NCBI RefSeq assembly: GCF_006345805.1
Contig: NC_043008.1
Coordinates: 43,586,001 to 43,650,000, forward strand
Source of the DNA: Octopus sinensis
Lineage: Eukaryota
DNA length: 64,000 bases
Direction of reading: 5' to 3'
The stretch's first letter is position 1. Every line of letters begins with the position of its first letter. The position numbers were made by a program, and so were the translations under genes. The notes under the pieces were generated by a model. The model was not told the DNA's origin, searched no databases, and saw only the letters and a list, made by a program, of their open reading frames with translations. This document shows, in pieces, positions 1 through 34,269 of the stretch.

Positions 1-41
1 TCTGGTTGTTCTTGGAGCTTACTACGGCACCGGAAATAAAG
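1..41 (+). CDS. LIG3: DNA ligase III, 3' end of an upstream coding exon (partial, runs off window start)
   Basis: Codons from nt 2 read LVVLGAYYGTGNK+G, matching LIG3 DLVVLGAFYGxGxKGG as I recall it. GT donor at 42 (G|GTATTT) is phase 1 and joins the exon at 960 to make GGT. Not in the ORF track. Confidence 0.9.
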
Positions 42-564: not shown

Positions 565-866
565 CACCGTGACTGATCAGGCTATCAGATGTTGCTACAC
601 ATCGCTGGTCACAATGCGCTTTGCATTGTTTTAGCCTTCAAGTGATGCCACCCCGCTGGCTAAGCAAGCAGGCCAACAGAAGAAAGAGTGAGAGGAAGTT
701 TTGGTGAAAGAGTACAGCAGGGATCGCCACCACCCCCTGCTGGAGCCTCATGGAACTTTAGGTGTTTTCGCTCAATAAACACTCACAATGCCCGGTCTAG
801 GAATTGAAACCGCGATCCTACAACCGCGAGTCCGCTGCCCTAACTACTGGGCCATTGCGCCTCCAC
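565..866 (-). mobile_element. tRNA-headed SINE family A, tail type 1
   Basis: Reverse strand begins GTGGAGGCGCAATGGCCCAGTAGTTAGGGCAGCGGACTCG, with Pol III A and B boxes. TSD TCTATTCATAT at 554-564 and 867-877. Confidence 0.85.
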
Positions 867-959: not shown

Positions 960-1324
960 GTGGACTTATGTCGGTGTTCTTAACAGGAGTATACAATCCA
1001 TTCACCAAAAAATGGTGTACCGTTAGCAAAGTTGGTAATGGTTTCGATGACAAAACCTTAGACCGTTTGCAGAAGGAGCTGAAGATGGTAAAAATTAGCA
1101 AGGATGTTCAGAAAGTACCATCTTGGTTAAATATAAAAAAGAGTGTCATACCAGATTTTATTGTTGAGGACCCACATCAGGCGCCAGTCTGGGAGATCAC
1201 CGGAGCAGAATTTAGCAAGGCTGAAATTCACACAGCTGATGGGATTTCCATCAGGTTCCCTCGTCTCACCAAAATACGAACAGATAAAAGCTGGAAAGAA
1301 GCAACTGACCTACCAAGGCTTAAG
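960..1324 (+). CDS. LIG3: DNA ligase III exon, OB-fold domain
   Basis: GLMSVFLTGVYNPFTKKWCTV...VWEITGAEFSKAEIHTADGISIRFPRLTKIRTDKSWKEATDLPRLK. WEITGAEFSK and GISIRFPR are LIG3 signatures. Pyrimidine tract with AG at 958-959; donor AAG|GTGAGT at 1325. Confidence 0.96.
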
Positions 1325-3058: not shown

Positions 3059-3169
3059 GAGAAGAAACCAATGTGTAAATATGGCAGTGGTTGTTACCAA
3101 AAGAATCCTCAACATTTGGCAGCTTTTGACCATTCTACATCTTCCAGTGGTGCTGCCAGTACTTCTGTG
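3059..3169 (+). CDS. LIG3: DNA ligase III exon encoding a PBZ (PAR-binding, zf-CCHH) zinc finger
   Basis: TTTGCAG acceptor at 3057-3058. Reads EKKPMCKYGSGCYQKNPQHLAAFDHSTSSSGAASTSV, with C-x5-C-x6-H-x5-H spacing and CxYG and FxH positions. Donor GTG|GTACAA at 3170; 111 nt, phase 0-0. Confidence 0.88.
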
Positions 3170-3339
3170 GTACAAAATATTTCTTGTTTTACTGTTTAAT
3201 CTCCAGATCAACGAATTCAAATCCTAGTGAAGTTAAAAATTTGTAGCTTTAGATTACCCATACAATTCTGCCAAGAAAAATAGTTTTAATATTCTGCGGA
3301 CTTATGTTTATGCCAAAAATCATTAGTTAACATGGTTAA

Positions 3340-3745
3340 TTAACCATGTTAATTAATAATTACATGGTTAATTAGGAATTACATGGTTAATTCATAATTA
3401 TACTAAATTAATGATTACATTGTTAATTATGCATTGCATGGTTAATTGATAATTAATTTGTTAAGTAAAGGTTACTTTCTTACTTAGTGATTACATAGTT
3501 ATCACATCAATAATTACTTTGTCAGTTAGTGACTATTTGGTTAATTAATGATTGCTTTGCTAATTATAGCTGTTGTGATTAATTAGTAATTATTTGGTCA
3601 ATCAGTGATTTCATGATCAATTATTGATTACATAGTTAGTTACTGAATACATGGTTAATTAGTGATTGCATATTTAATTAGTAATTATATAGTTAATTAG
3701 TAATCACATAGTTAATTAGTAATTGCATAGCTAATTAGTGGTTGG
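3340..3745. repeat. Degenerate ~20-22 bp AT-rich minisatellite (core AATTACATGGTTAATTAG)
   Basis: Many visible imperfect copies of TTACATGGTTAATT / TTACATAGTTAATTAG. Confidence 0.7.
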
Positions 3746-4680: not shown

Positions 4681-4752
4681 TAGTTAGTGATTACATAGAT
4701 ACTAATAGCACAATGATTAATGAGTGACCTTTCTTTATTCGTACCTCTTCAG

Positions 4753-4844
4753 TCAGATCCTCTGCCCAATGTGTTCCGTAACATGAAGATTTACCTCCCT
4801 AAAAACATGGAATCCTACAAGAAACTGAAGAGATTCATTATTGC
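4753..4844 (+). CDS. LIG3: DNA ligase III exon, BRCT N-terminal part
   Basis: CTCTTCAG acceptor at 4751-4752. Reads SDPLPNVFRNMKIYLPKNMESYKKLKRFII+GC, similar to the LIG3 BRCT (L.DIF.G..LYLP....F..L.RYFVA). Ends at the U12 donor ATATCCTTT. Confidence 0.9.
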
Positions 4845-5745
4845 ATATCCTTTTATGGTTACAATGCTGGATGTTTGTTGTTGTTATTGTTTAACCCTTG
4901 TTTAGCCCTGATCCTGCAGGACCTATGATCAAAAGTGTCCCAACTGTGGGCCATCTTGTTTTTTTAAATATATCGTCCAACCCATGCTAGCATGGAAAGC
5001 GGACATTAAACGATGATGATATGTTTGCCAGGACATTGTCTAATGTGCTCTTCTCTTTTTGGAAAGAAGATTTAGCTGCTATTTCTAGTAGGTACAGTGG
5101 CTACACAGAAGCTATCTAATAAACTTGACTCTGTTATTGTTGCTGTTGTTTAGCCCCTGGTCATCTCTGATCCAACAGGACCTGTGATCAAAAATGTGGG
5201 CTATATCCCATTCACTGTCTGAATGTTTTTTTGAAATATGAAATGTAGGTTTCAAGAGAATGCTTATCCTTATGTCCTTTTGTCTAAAAACCTTTGTGAA
5301 CAACACCTGCAAAAATCGCTGCTCCAGTGTTACGCTTTTGATTTCATTTCAGGTTTTTGTGTTAATATTTTCATAAACATCATAAATTCTCTACAATTGA
5401 AGTCATGAAATTGTGTTGCTGTTTAAGCAATGTTCCAAAATAATACCTTCTATTAATACTAAGTACCATTTATGCAATTACAAGCCTCTTTGAATTTCAT
5501 TCTGGTCCAGAAAAAAACATTGATTTTCAAAATGTTTTATAGATTTTATTGATATATGTTTTAATGTGTGTATGTGTGTGACACTGTAGAATTGAACCTA
5601 AAACCCCTTTGCTTCAAAGTGAACATTGCAAACCACACAACCATATTCTTGCGTATTATTATAATTAAATATTTTGTGCCATTTTTACTCGTATTTAGTT
5701 CTAGTTGTCTGTGTCTCTCTAATTGTTTTCCTTAATTAATCGCAC
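4845..5745 (+). other. U12-type AT-AC intron (901 nt)
   Basis: 5' end ATATCCTTTT, branch-like TTTTCCTTAAT at 5726-5736, terminal CGCAC at 5741-5745. Splicing yields GC+T TTC GAT GGA = A-F-D-G, restoring the BRCT AFDG motif. Confidence 0.9.
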
Positions 5746-5818
5746 TTTCGATGGAGAAATATTGCCGGACCATGACATCTCCAACGCCACCCACCTTGTC
5801 ATTGTCAAAGACCTCAAT
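5746..5818 (+). CDS. LIG3: DNA ligase III exon, BRCT middle part
   Basis: T+FDGEILPDHDISNATHLVIVKDLN, resembling LIG3 FDGDLV.EFD...ATHV. Donor AAT|GTAGGT at 5819, phase 0. Confidence 0.88.
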
Positions 5819-6451: not shown

Positions 6452-6826
6452 AAGTCTGATCTCTCTGTTTATGACCTATGTAAGACTGATCACACTGTTT
6501 ATGACCTATGTGAGACTGATCACACTGTTTATGACCTATGTAAGACTGATCACCCTGTTTATGATTTATGTAAGACTGATCACCCTATTTATGACCTATG
6601 TGAGACTGATCACACTGTTTAAGACCTATGTAAGACTGATCACACTGTTTATGACCTATGTAAGACTGATCACCCTGTTTATGATCTATGTAAGACTGAT
6701 CTCTCAATAATCTATGTAAGACAGATCACCCTGTTTATAATCCATATAAGACTGATCTCACTATTTATGATAGCTCTACAAGACTGATCTTTCAGTTTAT
6801 GATATCTATGTGAGACTGATCTCTTA
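6452..6826. repeat. 30-bp minisatellite (ATGACCTATGTAAGACTGATCACACTGTTT), about 8 good and about 4 degenerate units
   Basis: Exact 30-nt periodicity in 6452-6703; translates as repeated FMTYVRLITL. Confidence 0.95.
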
Positions 6827-7494: not shown

Positions 7495-7525
7495 TATTTG
7501 AAGATTATTATTATTATTATTATTA

Positions 7526-7557
<32 letters not shown>

Positions 7558-7760
7558 TTTGTTGTTGTTGTTATTATTATTATCATTATTATTCTTATTA
7601 TTATTATCATTTTTTATTATTATTATTGTTATTATTTTTGTTATTATTTTTGTTGTTATTATTATTATTTTTATGATTTTTATTATTGTTGTTATTATTA
7701 TTATTATATTATTATTATTATTATTTTTATGATTTTTATTATTGTTGTTGTTATTACTAC
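7495..7760. repeat. (ATT/GTT)n trinucleotide microsatellite
   Basis: Directly visible in the sequence. Confidence 0.95.
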
Positions 7761-7898: not shown

Positions 7899-8015
7899 GA
7901 AAGTGATGTCAGCTCAGCTTCGCCTTCGGCTGTCTGTATAACGTCCGAGTGGCTGTGGAAGTGTATTAAGAAGAAGCAGTGTGTACCAACACAAAAGTAT
8001 GTCTTCACTGCCTGA
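7899..8015 (+). CDS. LIG3: DNA ligase III last coding exon, BRCT C-terminus and stop
   Basis: CCCTCAG acceptor at 7897-7898. Reads ESDVSSASPSAVCITSEWLWKCIKKKQCVPTQKYVFTA*, containing the BRCT alpha-3 motif EWxWxCI. TGA at 8013-8015. Confidence 0.9.
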   Translation, partial: ESDVSSASPSAVCITSEWLWKCIKKKQCVPTQKYVFTA

Positions 8016-8139: not shown

Positions 8140-8195
8140 TGCACACACACACACATGTGAATACATATATACATACACACTTATATATATATGTG

Positions 8196-8255
<60 letters not shown>

Positions 8256-8464
8256 CACACATATATATACACACATACATATATATATTGTACATACACA
8301 CATATATATACACACATACATATATATATATGTACATGCATACATATATATACATACATACACACTTATATATATATTATATATATATGCATATATATAT
8401 ATCATCATCATCATCATCATCGTTTAGCATGGAAAACGGACGCTAAACGATGATGATGATGATG

Positions 8465-8497
<33 letters not shown>

Positions 8498-8986
8498 AGT
8501 GTGTATGTATGTATACATATATGTATGTATATATATGTATGCATGTACATATATATATATGTATGTGTGTATATATGTGTGTATATATATATGTGTGTAT
8601 ATATATATATATGTGTGTGTATATATATATGTGTGTGTATATATATATGTGTGTGTATATATATATGTGTATATATCTATATATATATATATGTATATAT
8701 GTATGTGTGTATGTATATATGTATGTGTGTATGTATATATGTATGTGTGTATGTATACATATGTATATGTGTATATATATGTATGTGTGTATATGTATGT
8801 GTGTGTATATATATATATATTATATATATACATGCAGATGTATATAAGTATATGTGTGTATGTAAGTATATGAACGTCTGCATACAAAACTTTTTCTATC
8901 TTCATATATGTTATTAAATATATATATTTGTATGTAAAATATGTATTCACGTGTGTGTATGTATATATTTATATATTTGTGTGTGT

Positions 8987-15200: not shown

Positions 15201-15611
15201 ATGTATATATGGTACACAGACATATATAGTTTGTATATATTGTTCCCGCTGTCTCCATCCCTCTGTTCTCCACCCACGAACCATTTCCTCTCCTGGTTCT
15301 GTATAGAAATAAGTAAAAAACACAACAGATCTCTTTCATTCCAAATAACATCGTTACAACAACAACCACAACATCAGTACGAACAACAAGCACAGCAGCA
15401 ACACCAATTCTAAAATCTACATCAACAAAGACAAGAGAAACACTAAGAAGAACGGCAGCAGCAACAACAACAACATCGTCAGTTACTACGAGAACCGTAA
15501 CCGCGGTACCACCATGACCACCACCAACAAAAACAACGTCAATCCAAATAGCAACGACAACAACAGCAATATCAATGATATGATGAACATCCACAACAGC
15601 AGCAGCAACAA

Positions 15612-15969
15612 GTGGAGGCGCAATGGCCCAGTGGTTAGGGCAGCGGACTCGCGGTTTCGATTCCCAGACCGGGCGTTGTGTGTGTTTATTGAGCGAAAAC
15701 ACCTAAAGCTACATGAGGCTCCGGCAGGGGATGGGGTGGCGACCCCTGTTGTACTTTTTCGCCCCAACTTTCTCTCACACTTTCTTCCTGTTTCTTGTCC
15801 CCGACTTCCTATGCAACCGCTGAGCCTGGATGCGCATTCATCCATCCGTCGATGCTCTCGGTGTCGGGGGTTGACCTGCTTTCTCTTCTGCGGGTCTTAC
15901 GAATAGCAAAGGACCACGTTTCGGACTTCTCCCATCATGCGAGCTCTGGGACGAAGACCGTTCGCTCAA
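15612..15969 (+). mobile_element. SINE family A, tail type 2
   Basis: Same tRNA-like head and core as 565-866, with a different 3' half. Near-TSD CAGCAGCAACAA / CAGTAGCAACAA (15600-15611, 15970-15981) within a CAA/CAG tract. Confidence 0.8.
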
Positions 15970-20891: not shown

Positions 20892-20938
<47 letters not shown>

Positions 20939-20948
20939 ATATCTATCT

Positions 20949-23900
20949 GTAGTGGCACCGCGGTACTTTTCCACAAGAGTCTGGATCTCAAAGTAAGGAC
21001 AATATTCGTAGACCCGGAGGGTAGACTGGTCGTCCTGGATGTCGACGGCAGCAATGGGTGCGCTTTTCGACTCGTATCAGTCTACGCACCGCCCTTAACA
21101 GGTCGGGCGGATTTCTTTCAACGTCTAGAAGTATTCTTGGGAACGTCTCGTCCTTTACTCTTAGTGGGGGGGTTGGAATGCCACCTTGGACACGCATGTA
21201 GACTACGTGGGTAGAGATAGGAATAGACGGGGATGCAAATGCCTCAGAGACCTGCTCAGACGCTTTCAACTGTCTGACAGGTTCCGACTAGACCACCCGA
21301 ATGCGCCAACGTGGACATGGAGCAACCGCATCGGGTCGTCGAGATCGTATCTAGATAGGATACTGTGTAGGACAGTAGACAGAGATAGCATAGGATGTCC
21401 ACAATTCCACATAGTCAGCTACACGGATCACAAACTTGTGACATGTACGCTAGACTTAGATAAGACACTTAGGCAGGGTCCCGGATACTGGAAACTAAAC
21501 GCGTCTTTCCCACCGAGACAGGTTTTCAGAGACCGGATTAGCACACTAGTAAAGAGGGCTTTGACGGGAGCCATCATCAACAACAAATGGTGGTTTACCC
21601 TCAAGAGAGCAGTAAAAGCAGAAGCGATTAGGTACAGCAAAGCACTAGCCATAGATAGAAATAGAGTAGAGGGTGAGCTAGTTAAGAAGCTAGAAGAGGC
21701 AATTAGAAGCGGCATCACATCCGACGTTTTGGCGGCGAGGTTGGCCCTCGACCAACACTTCAACGCCAAACACGAAGGATGTGCTGTCAGAGCTAGGATG
21801 CGTGCTCTAAGGAACGAAGGTGTTGGAGCCGCGAGAGAGGCCCGGGTGGCAGAGGCGCAACAGGGCAACAAAGCCACCATTCGGTCACTGGTAGATGAAC
21901 AGGGGCGCGAATTGCTCGAGCCAAGTAAAATGTGTGAGGCCTTTCAGCAGCATTTTGCCCGACTGTTCGGAACGAGTGGAGGGCAAGAACGTAGGGTGGA
22001 CTTCAGTGCCTACCTACATAGCCTACCACGACTCTCGACAAGAAAGGCAGGGTGCTGCGAAGGTGCCATCACGGCGGCGGAAGTGCAGGAAGCGATGGCA
22101 GAATGCTCGGGGGACAAATCACCGAGTTTGGATGGTCTACCCTACGAGCTTTACAATTGTATGCCAGACTTGTTTGGAGACCTCTTGGCGGCGGTGTACT
22201 GCAACTGGCAGCAAAACGGGAGCATTCCTGGTTTTGTGAGCCGAGGAGCCGTAACACTGCTGAAGAAAGATCTAAACAAGGGAAACATTATAGATAACTT
22301 TAGGCCCATCACTCTGCTTAATGCAGACTTGAAAATTTTGGCCAAGGTGCTAGCCAAGAGGTTGGCGCTTGTCATCGAGAAACTGGTCGACAGGGCGCAA
22401 ACATGCGCCGTGCCAGGCCGGACCATCCATGACAACCTCCACCTGATGCGCTACATCATAGACAGGGTAGTTAACGAACCTGGCATGGGTGGGGCGCTGA
22501 TCAATTTGGATCAATCGAAAGCTTTCGATAGGGTGGACCATCGATACTTGGAGGCGGTCCTCGGAGCGGCTGGCTTCGGTCCCGTCTTCCGCGGCTGGAT
22601 AGCCGCTTTGTACAGAGGCATCCGTTCGGTAATTCGCGTGAATGGACATCTATCGAGACCCTTCGACATAGCACGTTCGGTCCGTCAGGGATGCCCCCTC
22701 TCGTCGCTTCTATACGTATTGACTCTCGAGCCATTATTGCGGAAGCTGGCAACCTTGAGAGGCATCCCGCGAGAACTGGGATGCGGGACGAGCGTGTCTG
22801 CATACGCGGACGACGTCACCGTCATAGTGTCTAGCCACGAGCACATCGAGCAGGTCGGCGAGACACTGAAAAACTACGAAGCGGTGACAGGAGCAAAAAT
22901 CAACCGGGAAAAGTCAGTGGGCTTGCGACTCGCAGGACCTGGAGAGCAAGCCCATGCCGTCCACCAGCGCCTCCGTGTGGGACGCTGGACCGACGGCCCG
23001 GTTGAGTTGCTCGGGGTCTGGTTTGGTCCGGACCTCCAAGTGGAGAAGAACTGGAACGAGATAACGAGTAGGGTGGTCACTCTCGCCCGGCAATGGACCG
23101 AGAGGAAACTGTCCCTAAAAGGTCGGGCGGAGGTGGCGAACACGTACATCGCGTCCGTCATCTACTACCGCCTGACCGTCGTACCTTGTCCCGACCCTAC
23201 CATCACCAAACTACAACGCATTCTCTTTCGCTTCTTGTGGAAAGGATGCGTCCCGATGGTCAGGCGATCCATTTGTCAACACCCGTTTAAAAGGAGGGCT
23301 GGGCATGCAGTGGTGGTTGATGATGCGCAGACACGCGCTGAGACTGCAATATCTCTGGCTCTATGTAGACGACGGTGAACAGGTGTGGTCGCCGTTTGTG
23401 AGGCACGCTTTCCCGCAGCTCGTTCCATGACCGAACTGCAGTCGTGGATCAAAAAGAGGCCGAGAAGAAGGGCGAATGGCACCGCGAGTGTCGCGTTGCT
23501 CTCAAGCAACTCTGCTGTCCTGGGTCGACCTTGAGTGACTTCAACACAACCAAAGCATTCTATAGGGGTTTAGTGGAGGGGAGGTACGACGACGAGCTCG
23601 GGGCGAACCTGGACGTCGACGAGGAGTACCTGACCCGCCTGTTCAGGACGACTTTCGGGCCAGGGCCCATGGACAACTTCCAGAGATCCCTGGCCTGGCA
23701 GTGCTACGAGAAGCGCTACCCGTTCGGGATAAGCTCTACAGACACGGCTCGAGAAACACGGGGCCGATCTGCCCGAGATGCGGTCAGAGCGACGAAACCG
23801 TTCTGCACGCACTCGTGCAGTGTCCAACAATTTCCGACCTGTGGGCTTGTGTCGAACAACTGCTGTCACGTGTGGGACGAGTCGGTTTATCAGCTGAGTC

Positions 23901-24560
23901 TATCGTTAATATTGTCACGCCTCCCTCCTTCAAACGGGAAGGAAGAGCTATTTTCATCATCCTTGTGGCTATGGCGAAAGAATGTATCTGGTGGACGCAT
24001 CTGAAAGGATTGGAGACAAACACTTTCCTCTCTGGTCAATCTCTCATCAACTTCTTCAAGTACCACTTGAAAAGGAAAGTGAGAGTAGAGAGGCAAGTTT
24101 TTTCTAGCGAATGTTTTAAAAAAAGATGGGTGAATGTAGCAAGAATGGCACGTATGAATGACGAAGCCACCTTGAGCATGATCCTATGAACCCAGAAATT
24201 GAAAACAGAGAGTTGCTTATTTGCAAAAAAAAAAAAAAAAAGAAATATAACATGTGACTCCATTGACCGAGGTACCGTGGTCTTTTCCGTAGGCTTTTAT
24301 TTCCACGGGTAAACCTCACCTGTCCTCCCCTTTACACTTCATATTGACATTCTGTGATAACGATCCCTATTGATCAATTTTTTTTTTTTTCTTTAACCCC
24401 CCTTTTTTTTGTCCTCTTTCTCTCCTTTTACGATCCCTTTTGATCGAAACTCCCCCTTCCTGTTTTCTTTTTTTTTTTTTTTTTTAAACCTTCAAAAGAA
24501 AAGCTCTACCTTGTAATTTGTTCTATCTGTGTGCAGCCCTGTGTGGCTAATAAAGAAACA
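20949..24560 (+). mobile_element. 5'-truncated Tx1/L1-type non-LTR retrotransposon (APE endonuclease part, RT, CCHC), inactivated by frameshifts
   Basis: EN remnant (GRLVVLDV, VSVYAP, G-WNA, SYLDRI, YTDHK), WKLN linker, RT motifs FRPITLLNADLKIL, LDQSKAFDRVDH, VRQGCPLS and YADD, GGLG, and CPRCGQSDETVLHALVQC. Stop at 24189; the 3'UTR ends AATAAAGAAA. Confidence 0.93.
21186..23378 (+). pseudogene. Longest intact stretch (730 aa) of the LINE ORF2 endonuclease/reverse transcriptase
   Basis: From the ORF track. Bounded by a +1 frameshift at ~21170 and another at ~23290; the C-terminus continues in other frames to 24189. Confidence 0.88.
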
Positions 24561-31665: not shown

Positions 31666-32051
31666 GGATGGAAGCACTCCGTCGGTTACGACGACGAGGG
31701 TTCCGGTTGATCCGAATCAACGGAATAGCCTGCTCGTGAAATTAACGTGTAAGTGGCTGAGCACTCCACAGACACGTGCACCCTTAACGTAGTTCTCGGG
31801 GATATTCAGCGTGACACAGAGAGTGACAAGGCCGGCCCTTTGAAATACGGGTACAACAGAAACAGGAAGTAAGAGTGAGAGAAAGTTGTGGTGAAAGAGT
31901 ACAGCAGGGATCACCACCATCCTCTGCCGGTGCCTCGTGGAGCTTTAGGTGTTTTCGCTCAATAAACACTCACAACGCCCGGTCTGGGAATCGAAACCGC
32001 GATCCTATTACCGCGAGTCCGCTGCCCTAACCACTGGGCCATTGCGCCTCC
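31666..32051 (-). mobile_element. SINE family A, tail type 3, full length
   Basis: TSD GATCAGAAAAT at 31655-31665 and 32052-32062. Confidence 0.9.
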
Positions 32052-33886: not shown

Positions 33887-34269
33887 GTGGAGGCGCAATG
33901 GCCCAGTGGTTAGGGCAGCGGACTCGCGGTCATAGGATCGCGGTTTCGATTCCCAGACCGGGCATTGTTAGTGTTTATTGAGATAAAACACCTAAAGCTC
34001 CACGAGGCTCCGGCGGGGGTGGTGGTGAACCCTTCTGTATTCTTTCACCACAACTTTCTCTCGCTCTTTCTTCTTGTTTCTCTTGTACCTGTATTTCAAA
34101 GGACCAACCCTGTCACACTCTGTGTCACGCTGAATCTCCTCGAGAACTACGTTAAGGGTGCACGTGTCTGTGGAGTGCTCAGCCACTTGCGCGTTAATAT
34201 CACGAGCAAGCTGTTCCGTTGATCGTATCAGCTGGGACCCTCATCGTCGCAACCGACGGAGTGCTCCTA
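33887..34269 (+). mobile_element. SINE family A, tail type 3, full length
   Basis: TSD TAGTTGTTTGATA at 33874-33886 and 34270-34282. Confidence 0.9.

What the first reader, a model, noticed from the sequence alone, without database searches (positions are those of the whole stretch)
3059..3169. DNA ligase III carries a PBZ poly(ADP-ribose)-binding zinc finger on its own symmetric exon
Seen: a 37-codon exon missed by the ORF track encodes KKPMCKYGSGCYQKNPQHLAAFDH, with exact C-x5-C-x6-H-x5-H spacing, in frame between the OB-fold and the BRCT. Known: this is the PBZ motif of APLF/CHFR. Human LIG3 has no PBZ and reaches PARylated breaks largely through its BRCT partner XRCC1 and its N-terminal zinc finger. 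I recall PBZ-ligase III fusions being noted in some invertebrates, so novelty needs checking. Inference: this ligase could be recruited to PAR directly. The phase 0-0 borders and weak GTACAA donor fit exon shuffling and allow in-frame skipping.
Basis: partly seen in the sequence, partly recalled or inferred. Interest (0 to 1): 0.75.

Follow-up and report, generated by a model that had tools for sequence, protein, structure and literature searches.

The report
PBZ zinc-finger exon in DNA ligase III

Summary
Observation confirmed. Window 3059-3169 (+) is a 37-codon, phase 0/0 exon with an AG acceptor and a weak GT donor. It lies in frame between the OB-fold/linker exons and the BRCT exons of a DNA ligase III gene. 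It encodes KKPMCKYGSGCYQKNPQHLAAFDH, which matches Pfam PBZ (PF10283) at 48 bits against a cut-off of 22.7, and both APLF PBZ fingers in the PDB at E 2e-13.

The novelty claim fails. Ligase III with a PBZ between OB-fold and BRCT is found in sponge-like sequences, corals, Hydra, jellyfish, a clam, sea star, sea cucumber and amphioxus. Nematodes carry a PBZ at the C-terminus without a BRCT. Several of these are named RefSeq/GenBank proteins. Vertebrate and arthropod ligase III sequences lack it.

In coral, amphioxus and clam genomes the PBZ also occupies its own phase 0/0 exon. A clam transcript contig shows that exon spliced into mRNA. The best reading is an ancestral metazoan module, lost in some lineages.

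PAR binding is inferred, not shown. The zinc ligands and both adenine-stacking tyrosines are present, but the phosphate-contacting Arg (APLF R387) is Gln, as in most ligase III PBZs. Exon skipping would stay in frame but is untested.

Side finding: the intron at 4845-5745 is a U12-type AT-AC intron, conserved in position (as U12 GT-AG) in clam and coral.

The parts
2..41 (+). End of an upstream ligase III coding exon (LVVLGAYYGTGNK), cut by the window start; donor AAG|gtattt
   Evidence: aligns to the conserved LVVLGA(Y/F)YGTG.KGG block of LIG3 homologues
960..1324 (+). OB-fold exon (DNA_ligase_A_C, PF04679)
   Evidence: 84% identical at protein level to an exon on contig L001
2066..2368 (+). 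Linker exon, Ser/Lys/Glu-rich and poorly conserved; donor AAG|gtaaag, ends in phase 0
3059..3169 (+). PBZ exon: 37 codons, phase 0/0. PBZ core is KPMCKYGSGCYQKNPQHLAAFDH at 3065-3133. Zinc ligands are C 3074, C 3092, H 3113 and H 3131. Weak donor GTG|gtacaa; an alternative in-phase donor sits at 3166/3167.
4753..4844 (+). BRCT exon 1 (SDPLPNVFRNMKIYLPKNMESYKKLKRFIIA), ends in phase 2 at GC|atatcc
4845..5745 (+). U12-type AT-AC intron: donor ATATCCTTTT, branch site TTCCTTAAT at 5727-5735, acceptor ...cgcAC
   Evidence: The same position holds a U12-type GT-AG intron in clam (junction confirmed by transcript) and in coral.
5746..5818 (+). BRCT exon 2 (FDGEILPDHDISNATHLVIVKDLN); donor AAT|gtaggt
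7899..8015 (+). BRCT exon 3 and stop codon (…ITSEWLWKCIKKKQCVPTQKYVFTA*)

Best explanation
Window 3059-3169 is a genuine coding exon of the DNA ligase III gene. [quoted passage not shown]

The module is an inherited, ancestral metazoan feature of ligase III. It is kept on its own phase 0/0 exon in cnidarians, molluscs and cephalochordates, and it has been lost in vertebrates and arthropods.

Inferred mechanism: after PARP activation at a strand break, the zinc-folded finger binds ADP-ribose units of PAR through its two conserved tyrosines. This tethers the ligase core to PARylated chromatin directly. It would act alongside the BRCT (probable XRCC1 partner) and the N-terminal nick-sensing zinc finger, which lies outside this window.

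Shown here: the exon, the motif, its position, its conservation, and mRNA inclusion in a clam. Inferred: zinc binding, PAR binding, and inclusion in this species' mRNA.
For: The motif scores 48.3 bits against Pfam PBZ, cut-off 22.7, and matches both APLF PBZ fingers at E 1.9e-13. The spliced frame is open with consistent phases and canonical acceptor and donor. AlphaFold gives pLDDT of about 90 for the finger (residues about 25-50 of the 154-aa query), flanked by disordered linkers with pLDDT below 50, followed by a confident BRCT that matches human LIG3-alpha BRCT 3QVG/3PC7/3PC8 at TM 0.82-0.87.

A PBZ at the same position is found in LIG3 of coral Desmophyllum, jellyfish Rhopilema, Hydra, Porites, clam Tegillarca, sea star Acanthaster (full zf-PARP/DBD/adenylation/OB/PBZ/BRCT architecture), sea cucumber, amphioxus and sponge-like sequences. 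The flanking linker, by contrast, cannot be aligned.

The PBZ has its own phase 0/0 exon in coral, amphioxus and clam genomic loci. The clam transcript contig L002 aligns to genomic L005 in six blocks at 97-100% identity, one of which is the PBZ exon. Ascaris and filarial LIG3 keep a C-terminal PBZ although the BRCT is absent, which argues that the finger has a function of its own.
Against: No transcript data for this species were available, so inclusion of the exon here rests on homology. Its donor is the weakest in the gene.

The residue equivalent to APLF R387/R429, said to coordinate the PAR phosphates (PMC6264785), is Gln here. It is Gln in 18 of 31 LIG3 PBZs, while other PBZs have Arg in 166 of 229, so affinity or specificity may differ from APLF.

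A single PBZ binds PAR far more weakly than the APLF tandem, about 1000-fold according to PMC6264785. No binding data exist for any ligase III PBZ in the papers I could search.
Confidence: 0.8

Rival explanations
1. The exon is a regulated cassette. Weak-donor skipping (2368 joined to 4753) gives an in-frame ligase III without the PBZ, so the animal makes PAR-reading and PAR-blind isoforms, for example nuclear repair versus mitochondrial or germline forms.
For: Phase 0/0 borders keep the frame when the exon is skipped. The donor GTG|gtacaa matches only 4 of 9 consensus positions and has a tandem alternative GT 3 nt upstream. From general knowledge, mammalian LIG3 uses alternative C-terminal splicing (alpha and beta forms).
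Against: There are no transcript data. The weak donor is not conserved: coral has CAA|gtaagt and clam has AAG|gtattg. Every transcript-type contig of relatives that covers this region includes the PBZ (P0001, P0003, P0004; L002). I saw no PBZ-less isoform in a PBZ-bearing species.
Confidence: 0.15
2. The finger is folded and conserved but is not a PAR reader. The Gln-type ligase III PBZ has a different ligand, such as mono-ADP-ribose, another nucleotide, DNA ends or a protein partner.
For: The Arg that contacts PAR phosphates in APLF is replaced by Gln in most LIG3 PBZs from corals to amphioxus, which is a lineage-wide change rather than random decay. The sponge-like version even lacks the second Tyr (CNK).
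Against: Both tyrosines that stack on adenine and all zinc ligands are kept here. Nematode and Hydra LIG3 fingers keep CYRK. About 8% of non-LIG3 PBZs also have Gln. The functional context, a PARP-dependent repair ligase, fits PAR binding.
Confidence: 0.15
3. It is a chance open frame or decaying pseudo-exon in an intron, and the true mRNA joins 2368 directly to 4753.
For: The exon is short and is missed by a 60-aa ORF filter. The Cys/His spacing alone recurs by chance in this window.
Against: The profile score is far above threshold. Position, phase and flanking exon order are the same in three other phyla. The splice sites are in phase.
Confidence: 0.02

Closest known systems
PBZ-containing DNA ligase III orthologues of other invertebrates, e.g. 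Acanthaster planci XP_022085530.1, Hydra vulgaris XP_065679626.1, Tegillarca granosa KAJ8320539.1, Desmophyllum pertusum and Branchiostoma belcheri 'DNA ligase 3'
   Same: Same order of OB-fold, disordered linker, single PBZ and LIG3-type BRCT. Same CKYGxxCYQ-type finger. In clam, coral and amphioxus the PBZ is on its own phase 0/0 exon.
   Different: Only 40-50% identical overall. This species has one extra codon at the 5' end of the exon, a weaker donor, and an AT-AC rather than GT-AG version of the U12-type intron in the BRCT.
APLF tandem PBZ fingers (PDB 2KQB, 2KUO) and the CHFR PBZ
   Same: Same C-x5-C-x6-H-x5-H spacing. Same CxYGxxCYxKNPxHxxxFxH residues, including both PAR-contacting tyrosines.
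   Different: One finger here, not a tandem. Gln replaces the phosphate-contacting Arg (APLF R387/R429). The host protein is a ligase, not a histone chaperone/scaffold or an E3 ligase.
Human/vertebrate DNA ligase III-alpha
   Same: OB-fold and BRCT are orthologous. The modelled BRCT superposes on 3QVG/3PC7/3PC8 at TM 0.82-0.87.
   Different: Vertebrate proteins have no PBZ in the linker (P0005, P0007, P0259). From general knowledge, they reach PAR mainly through XRCC1.
Dictyostelium DNA ligase III with a macrodomain (Gunn et al. 2016, PMC5087659), and macrodomain-bearing LIG3-like proteins among the hits (PF01661 in P0075, P0082, P0091, P0094, P0104)
   Same: A ligase III orthologue fused to an ADP-ribose reader module that vertebrate LIG3 lacks.
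PBZ-bearing ligase K / ligase E of bdelloid rotifers and Mortierella (PMC6264785, PMC10665377)
   Same: An ATP-dependent DNA ligase core joined to one or two PBZ fingers in a disordered Ser/Thr-rich tail.
   Different: A different ligase family (minimal, horizontally acquired LigE/K), with no BRCT and no zf-PARP.

Membership tests
PBZ (PAR-binding zinc finger, Pfam PF10283 zf-CCHH) | C-x5-C-x6-H-x5-H zinc-ligand spacing | tested here: met
   CKYGSGCYQKNPQHLAAFDH at 3074-3133
PBZ (PAR-binding zinc finger, Pfam PF10283 zf-CCHH) | Profile match above Pfam's gathering score | tested here: met
   48.3 bits for the exon and 43.1 bits within the 366-aa product; cut-off 22.7
PBZ (PAR-binding zinc finger, Pfam PF10283 zf-CCHH) | Published consensus [K/R]xxCx[F/Y]GxxCxbb…Hxxx[F/Y]xH (PMC4030884) | tested here: met
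   K-PM-C-K-Y-G-SG-C-Y-QK-NPQ-H-LAA-F-D-H. Every specified position is met except the first of the two basic residues, which is Gln.
PBZ (PAR-binding zinc finger, Pfam PF10283 zf-CCHH) | PAR-contact residues: two Tyr (APLF Y381/Y386) and one Arg (R387), as summarised in PMC6264785 | tested here: inconclusive
   Both Tyr are present. The Arg is Gln, as in 18 of 31 LIG3 PBZs; it is Arg in 166 of 229 other PBZs.
PBZ (PAR-binding zinc finger, Pfam PF10283 zf-CCHH) | Compact independently folded mini-domain | tested here: met
   In the AlphaFold model the finger has pLDDT of about 90, between linkers with pLDDT below 50. It is too small for Foldseek to rank, so the fold match to APLF rests on sequence.
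PBZ (PAR-binding zinc finger, Pfam PF10283 zf-CCHH) | Zinc-dependent binding of poly(ADP-ribose) | not testable with these tools
   Needs a biochemical assay
DNA ligase III | ATP-dependent ligase OB-fold followed by the LIG3-specific C-terminal BRCT | tested here: met
   PF04679 at 52.5 bits and PF16759 at 77.4 bits. The BRCT model matches 3QVG/3PC7. Best homologues are named DNA ligase 3.
DNA ligase III | N-terminal PARP-like zinc finger, DNA-binding domain and adenylation domain | not testable with these tools
   These lie upstream of the window start. They are present in the full-length PBZ-bearing orthologue P0140.
U12-type (minor spliceosome) intron, AT-AC subclass: intron 4845-5745 | Donor /ATATCCTT, branch site TCCTTAAC-like 10-15 nt from the 3' end, terminal AC | tested here: met
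   GC|ATATCCTTTT; TTCCTTAAT at 5727-5735; …cgcAC|TTTC. The spliced product restores the RFIIAFDGE consensus. The homologous clam intron, GTATCCTTTG…TTCCTTAAC…cag, is confirmed by a transcript.

The most novel reading that the evidence does not exclude
Ligase III fingers form a distinct, ancient 'CYQ' subclass of PBZ, in which Gln replaces the phosphate-binding Arg and which is conserved from corals to amphioxus. On this reading the ancestral animal ligase III read ADP-ribose directly, perhaps with a different chain or mono-ADP-ribose preference. Vertebrates and arthropods later dropped the exon and handed PAR recognition to XRCC1. In this species the unusually weak donor could additionally make PBZ inclusion tunable.
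Probability: 0.3. Interest if true: 0.5.

Novelty: new member of a known kind. Interest (0 to 1): 0.3.

Why it matters
It shows how the same repair step can be wired differently. In mammals ligase III is brought to PARylated breaks largely by XRCC1. This makes invertebrate ligase III a natural test case for XRCC1-independent, PAR-dependent ligase recruitment, and for what a Gln-type PBZ binds.

For genome annotation there are two practical lessons. The 37-codon exon is easily missed. The adjacent U12-type intron makes ORF-based predictors read through into a spurious 'AYPF…' tail, as seen in two database proteins. None of this changes current understanding of the pathway.

Tried and rejected
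1. A second word-indexed protein search with the 154-aa PBZ+BRCT segment found nothing at E of 1e-3 or better. The exhaustive HMMER search replaced it.

2. I looked for the PBZ exon in L001, a genomic contig whose OB-fold exon is 84% identical. The OB-fold and linker exons were found, but no PBZ exon lay in the 5.9 kb of downstream sequence available. This is uninformative, because the introns there are longer than the flank.

3. I looked for a paper describing PBZ in ligase III. Four full-text searches and a 'zf-CCHH' search found only PBZ-ligase K/E and the Dictyostelium LIG3 macrodomain. Simsek & Jasin 2011, Ahel et al. 2008 and Eustermann et al. 2010 are not held, so I cannot say whether they mention it. 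I have an unverified memory that Ahel 2008 lists many non-mammalian PBZ repair proteins.

4. Foldseek on the two-domain model returned only BRCT matches. The finger is too small to rank.

5. Rfam and tRNA scans of the window found nothing.

6. I first tried a GT donor for the exon starting at 4753 (…AYPFM|gttaca). I rejected it because no in-frame AG acceptor precedes FDGEIL and the AT-AC signals fit exactly.

7. The species could not be identified. No protein more than 51% identical over the PBZ-BRCT region was returned.

Full report
WHAT IS THERE

The window opens inside a DNA ligase III gene on the + strand. From the sequence I built an exon chain: 2-41, 960-1324, 2066-2368, 3059-3169, 4753-4844, 5746-5818 and 7899-8015. 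It translates into one open 366-residue C-terminal product ending at a TGA.

Pfam places four features on this product, all above their curated cut-offs:
- DNA_ligase_A_C (OB-fold) at residues 14-123.
- PBZ (PF10283) at residues 239-261.
- LIG3_BRCT (PF16759, 77 bits) at residues 276-354.

The acceptor is tgtttgcag|GAG, the donor is GTG|gtacaa, and the exon has 37 codons with phase 0 at both ends. It encodes EKKPMCKYGSGCYQKNPQHLAAFDHSTSSSGAASTSV.

IS IT MORE THAN CHANCE?

The bare C-x5-C-x6-H-x5-H spacing is not significant. Three further matches occur in the six-frame translation of this microsatellite-rich window, all in low-complexity Cys/His/Tyr runs.

The whole motif is significant:
- The 37-residue exon alone scores 48.3 bits (E 9e-13) against Pfam PBZ, whose gathering score is 22.7.
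- A search of all PDB sequences returns only APLF, matching both of its PBZ fingers (E 1.9e-13).
- The match covers the entire published consensus [K/R]xxCx[F/Y]GxxCxbb…Hxxx[F/Y]xH (PMC4030884), except that the first basic residue is Gln.
- An AlphaFold model of the last 154 residues gives the finger a pLDDT of about 90, between two disordered linkers with pLDDT below 50. A confident BRCT follows, and it superposes on the human ligase III-alpha BRCT crystal structures 3QVG, 3PC7 and 3PC8 at TM 0.82-0.87.

IS IT NEW? NO.

The first homology search already returned ligase III fragments with a precomputed PF10283 hit:
- the coral Desmophyllum pertusum;
- the jellyfish Rhopilema;
- Branchiostoma belcheri;
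- filarial nematodes, Ascaris and Oesophagostomum;
- sponge-like JGI sequences;
- several transcript-sized Logan contigs.

An exhaustive HMMER search of 1.84 billion cluster representatives with the PBZ+BRCT segment, followed by name look-ups, added these:
- the clam Tegillarca granosa (KAJ8320539.1);
- the sea star Acanthaster planci (XP_022085530.1);
- the sea cucumber Apostichopus japonicus;
- Hydra vulgaris (XP_065679626.1);
- Porites lutea.

The sea-star protein is full length. Its architecture is zf-PARP, DNA-binding domain, adenylation domain, OB-fold, PBZ, BRCT.

In a multiple alignment the finger sits at the same place in all of these proteins, and the linker around it cannot be aligned. 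Frog, fish, a mammalian-type 991-aa LIG3, insects, a spider and a bryozoan cover the same region without a PBZ. Ascaris and filarial ligase III end in a PBZ and have no BRCT.

The most economical reading is that the PBZ was present in early metazoan ligase III and was lost in vertebrates, arthropods and some others.

I found no paper in the searchable library that discusses a ligase III PBZ, and the three most likely sources are not held. The principle is published, however. Dictyostelium ligase III carries a macrodomain that vertebrate LIG3 lacks (PMC5087659, PMC8529158). Ligase K/E of rotifers and Mortierella carries PBZ fingers (PMC6264785, PMC10665377).

GENE STRUCTURE IN OTHER PHYLA

I fetched genomic loci for the coral (L003), amphioxus (L004) and clam (L005) genes and mapped the proteins onto them. 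In all three the PBZ is a separate small exon of 78, 114 and 114 nt. Each has a phase-0 acceptor three to four codons before the first Cys (…cag|TC. A.G CC.) and a phase-0 donor. The 'own symmetric exon' is therefore real, but it is a shared ancient feature.

This is compatible with an old exon-shuffling gain. It also gives an easy route to loss. It says nothing special about this lineage.

A 1014-nt Logan contig from run SRR27896754 (L002) aligns to the clam locus in six blocks at 97-100% identity. One block is the PBZ exon (15273-15384), with the introns removed. This is direct evidence that the exon is spliced into mRNA in a mollusc. No transcript data for the window's own species were reachable.

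HOW IT MOST LIKELY WORKS

Shown: a zinc-finger module with all four ligands and both adenine-stacking tyrosines lies in a disordered tether between the ligase core and the BRCT.

Inferred from the APLF and CHFR precedent: PARP1/2 activated at a break build PAR, and the finger binds ADP-ribose units. This concentrates the ligase at the lesion. It would act additively with the BRCT (probably bound to XRCC1) and with the N-terminal nick-sensing finger.

Two cautions apply:
- The Arg that coordinates PAR phosphates in APLF (R387/R429; PMC6264785) is Gln here. Among the proteins collected, ligase III fingers have Gln in 18 of 31, Arg in 10 and Lys in 3. Other PBZs have Arg in 166 of 229 and Gln in 18 (counts are not corrected for redundancy). 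The Gln is therefore a conserved ligase III trait and not decay, but its effect on binding is unknown.
- A lone PBZ is reported to bind about 1000-fold more weakly than the APLF tandem (PMC6264785), so avidity with other contacts is probably needed.

SPLICING CLAIMS

Skipping the exon keeps the frame. The donor is the weakest of the gene, matching 4 of 9 consensus positions. A second in-phase GT three bases upstream would drop one Val.

The weak donor is not shared by coral (CAA|gtaagt) or clam (AAG|gtattg). Every transcript-type contig from relatives that spans the region contains the finger. Regulated skipping therefore remains possible but unsupported.

SIDE OBSERVATIONS

The intron after 4844 is not GT-AG. 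It begins ATATCCTTTT, has TTCCTTAAT 11 nt before its end, and ends in AC, which makes it a textbook U12-type AT-AC intron. Removing it restores the conserved RFIIA|FDGE junction.

Clam and coral have a U12-type GT-AG intron (GTATCCTTTG, with TTCCTTAAC or TTCTTAAC as branch site) at the identical codon position. The clam transcript confirms that junction. Amphioxus has no intron there.

Two database proteins (Rhopilema P0014 and ENA P0153), and the window's own ORF 4720-4905, read through this donor into a false 'AYPF…' tail.

The rest of the window holds the following:
- an apparently intact non-LTR retrotransposon ORF (RVT_1 and zf-RVT);
- four copies of a tRNA-derived SINE-like element;
- long microsatellite and minisatellite tracts;
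- no Rfam or tRNA hits.

VERDICT

The feature is an orthologous, database-recorded architecture common to most non-vertebrate animals, so it is a new member of a known kind, with modest interest. The open questions are biochemical (does a Gln-type single PBZ bind PAR?) and transcriptomic (is the exon ever skipped here?).

Noticed in passing
window 4845-5745 (+); also L005 18684-19350 and L003 7819-8124: U12-type AT-AC intron inside the BRCT coding region (ATATCCTTTT … TTCCTTAAT … AC). The same codon position holds a U12-type GT-AG intron in clam and coral, and no intron in amphioxus. This looks like a conserved minor-spliceosome intron with a subtype switch in this lineage.
   Followed up: partly
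window 4720-4905 (+); proteins P0014 (Rhopilema) and P0153 (ENA): ORF-based or automatic gene models read through the U12 donor and produce a spurious '…IIAYPF…' continuation instead of '…IIA|FDG…'. This appears to be a recurrent annotation error for this gene.
   Followed up: partly
window 3166-3171 (+): Tandem GT donors (TCT|GTG|GTACAA) are both in phase 0, so the PBZ exon may end at 3166 or 3169, a one-Val difference. Homology cannot decide, because this tail is not conserved.
   Followed up: no
window about 20900-24200 (+): G+C-rich island (up to 56% against about 35% around it) holding a 730-aa uninterrupted ORF with a reverse-transcriptase domain (RVT_1, E 2e-31), followed by a zf-RVT ORF. 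This is a non-LTR retrotransposon that may be recently active.
   Followed up: partly
window 821-861 (-), 15617-15657 (+), 32008-32048 (-), 33892-33932 (+): Four copies (0-3 mismatches over 41 nt) of a tRNA-like head sequence, GGCGCAATGGCCCAGT(A/G)GTTAGGGCAGCGGACTCGCGGTT, most likely a tRNA-derived SINE family. ARAGORN calls none of them a tRNA.
   Followed up: partly
window 6452-6821, 3348-3739, 7504-7756, 8182-8830: Introns of the ligase gene carry a 30-nt minisatellite (about 11 copies), a 19-nt AT-rich array (about 20 copies), an (ATT)85 run and a 650-bp TA/TATG-type microsatellite. Similar CA/TA tracts fill much of the window and create many long spurious Cys/Tyr/His-rich ORFs.
   Followed up: no
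proteins P0142, P0149 (JGI/Logan; not in the window): Proteins of 560-605 aa with two PBZ fingers followed by a LIG3-type BRCT (PF16759) but no ligase domains. This is an unexplained PBZ-PBZ-BRCT architecture of unknown organism.
   Followed up: no
proteins P0128 (Ascaris suum F1KSS3), P0088, P0100 (filarial nematodes): Nematode ligase III ends in a PBZ finger with the canonical CYRK and has no BRCT domain. This suggests the PAR reader can stand in for the XRCC1-binding module.
   Followed up: partly
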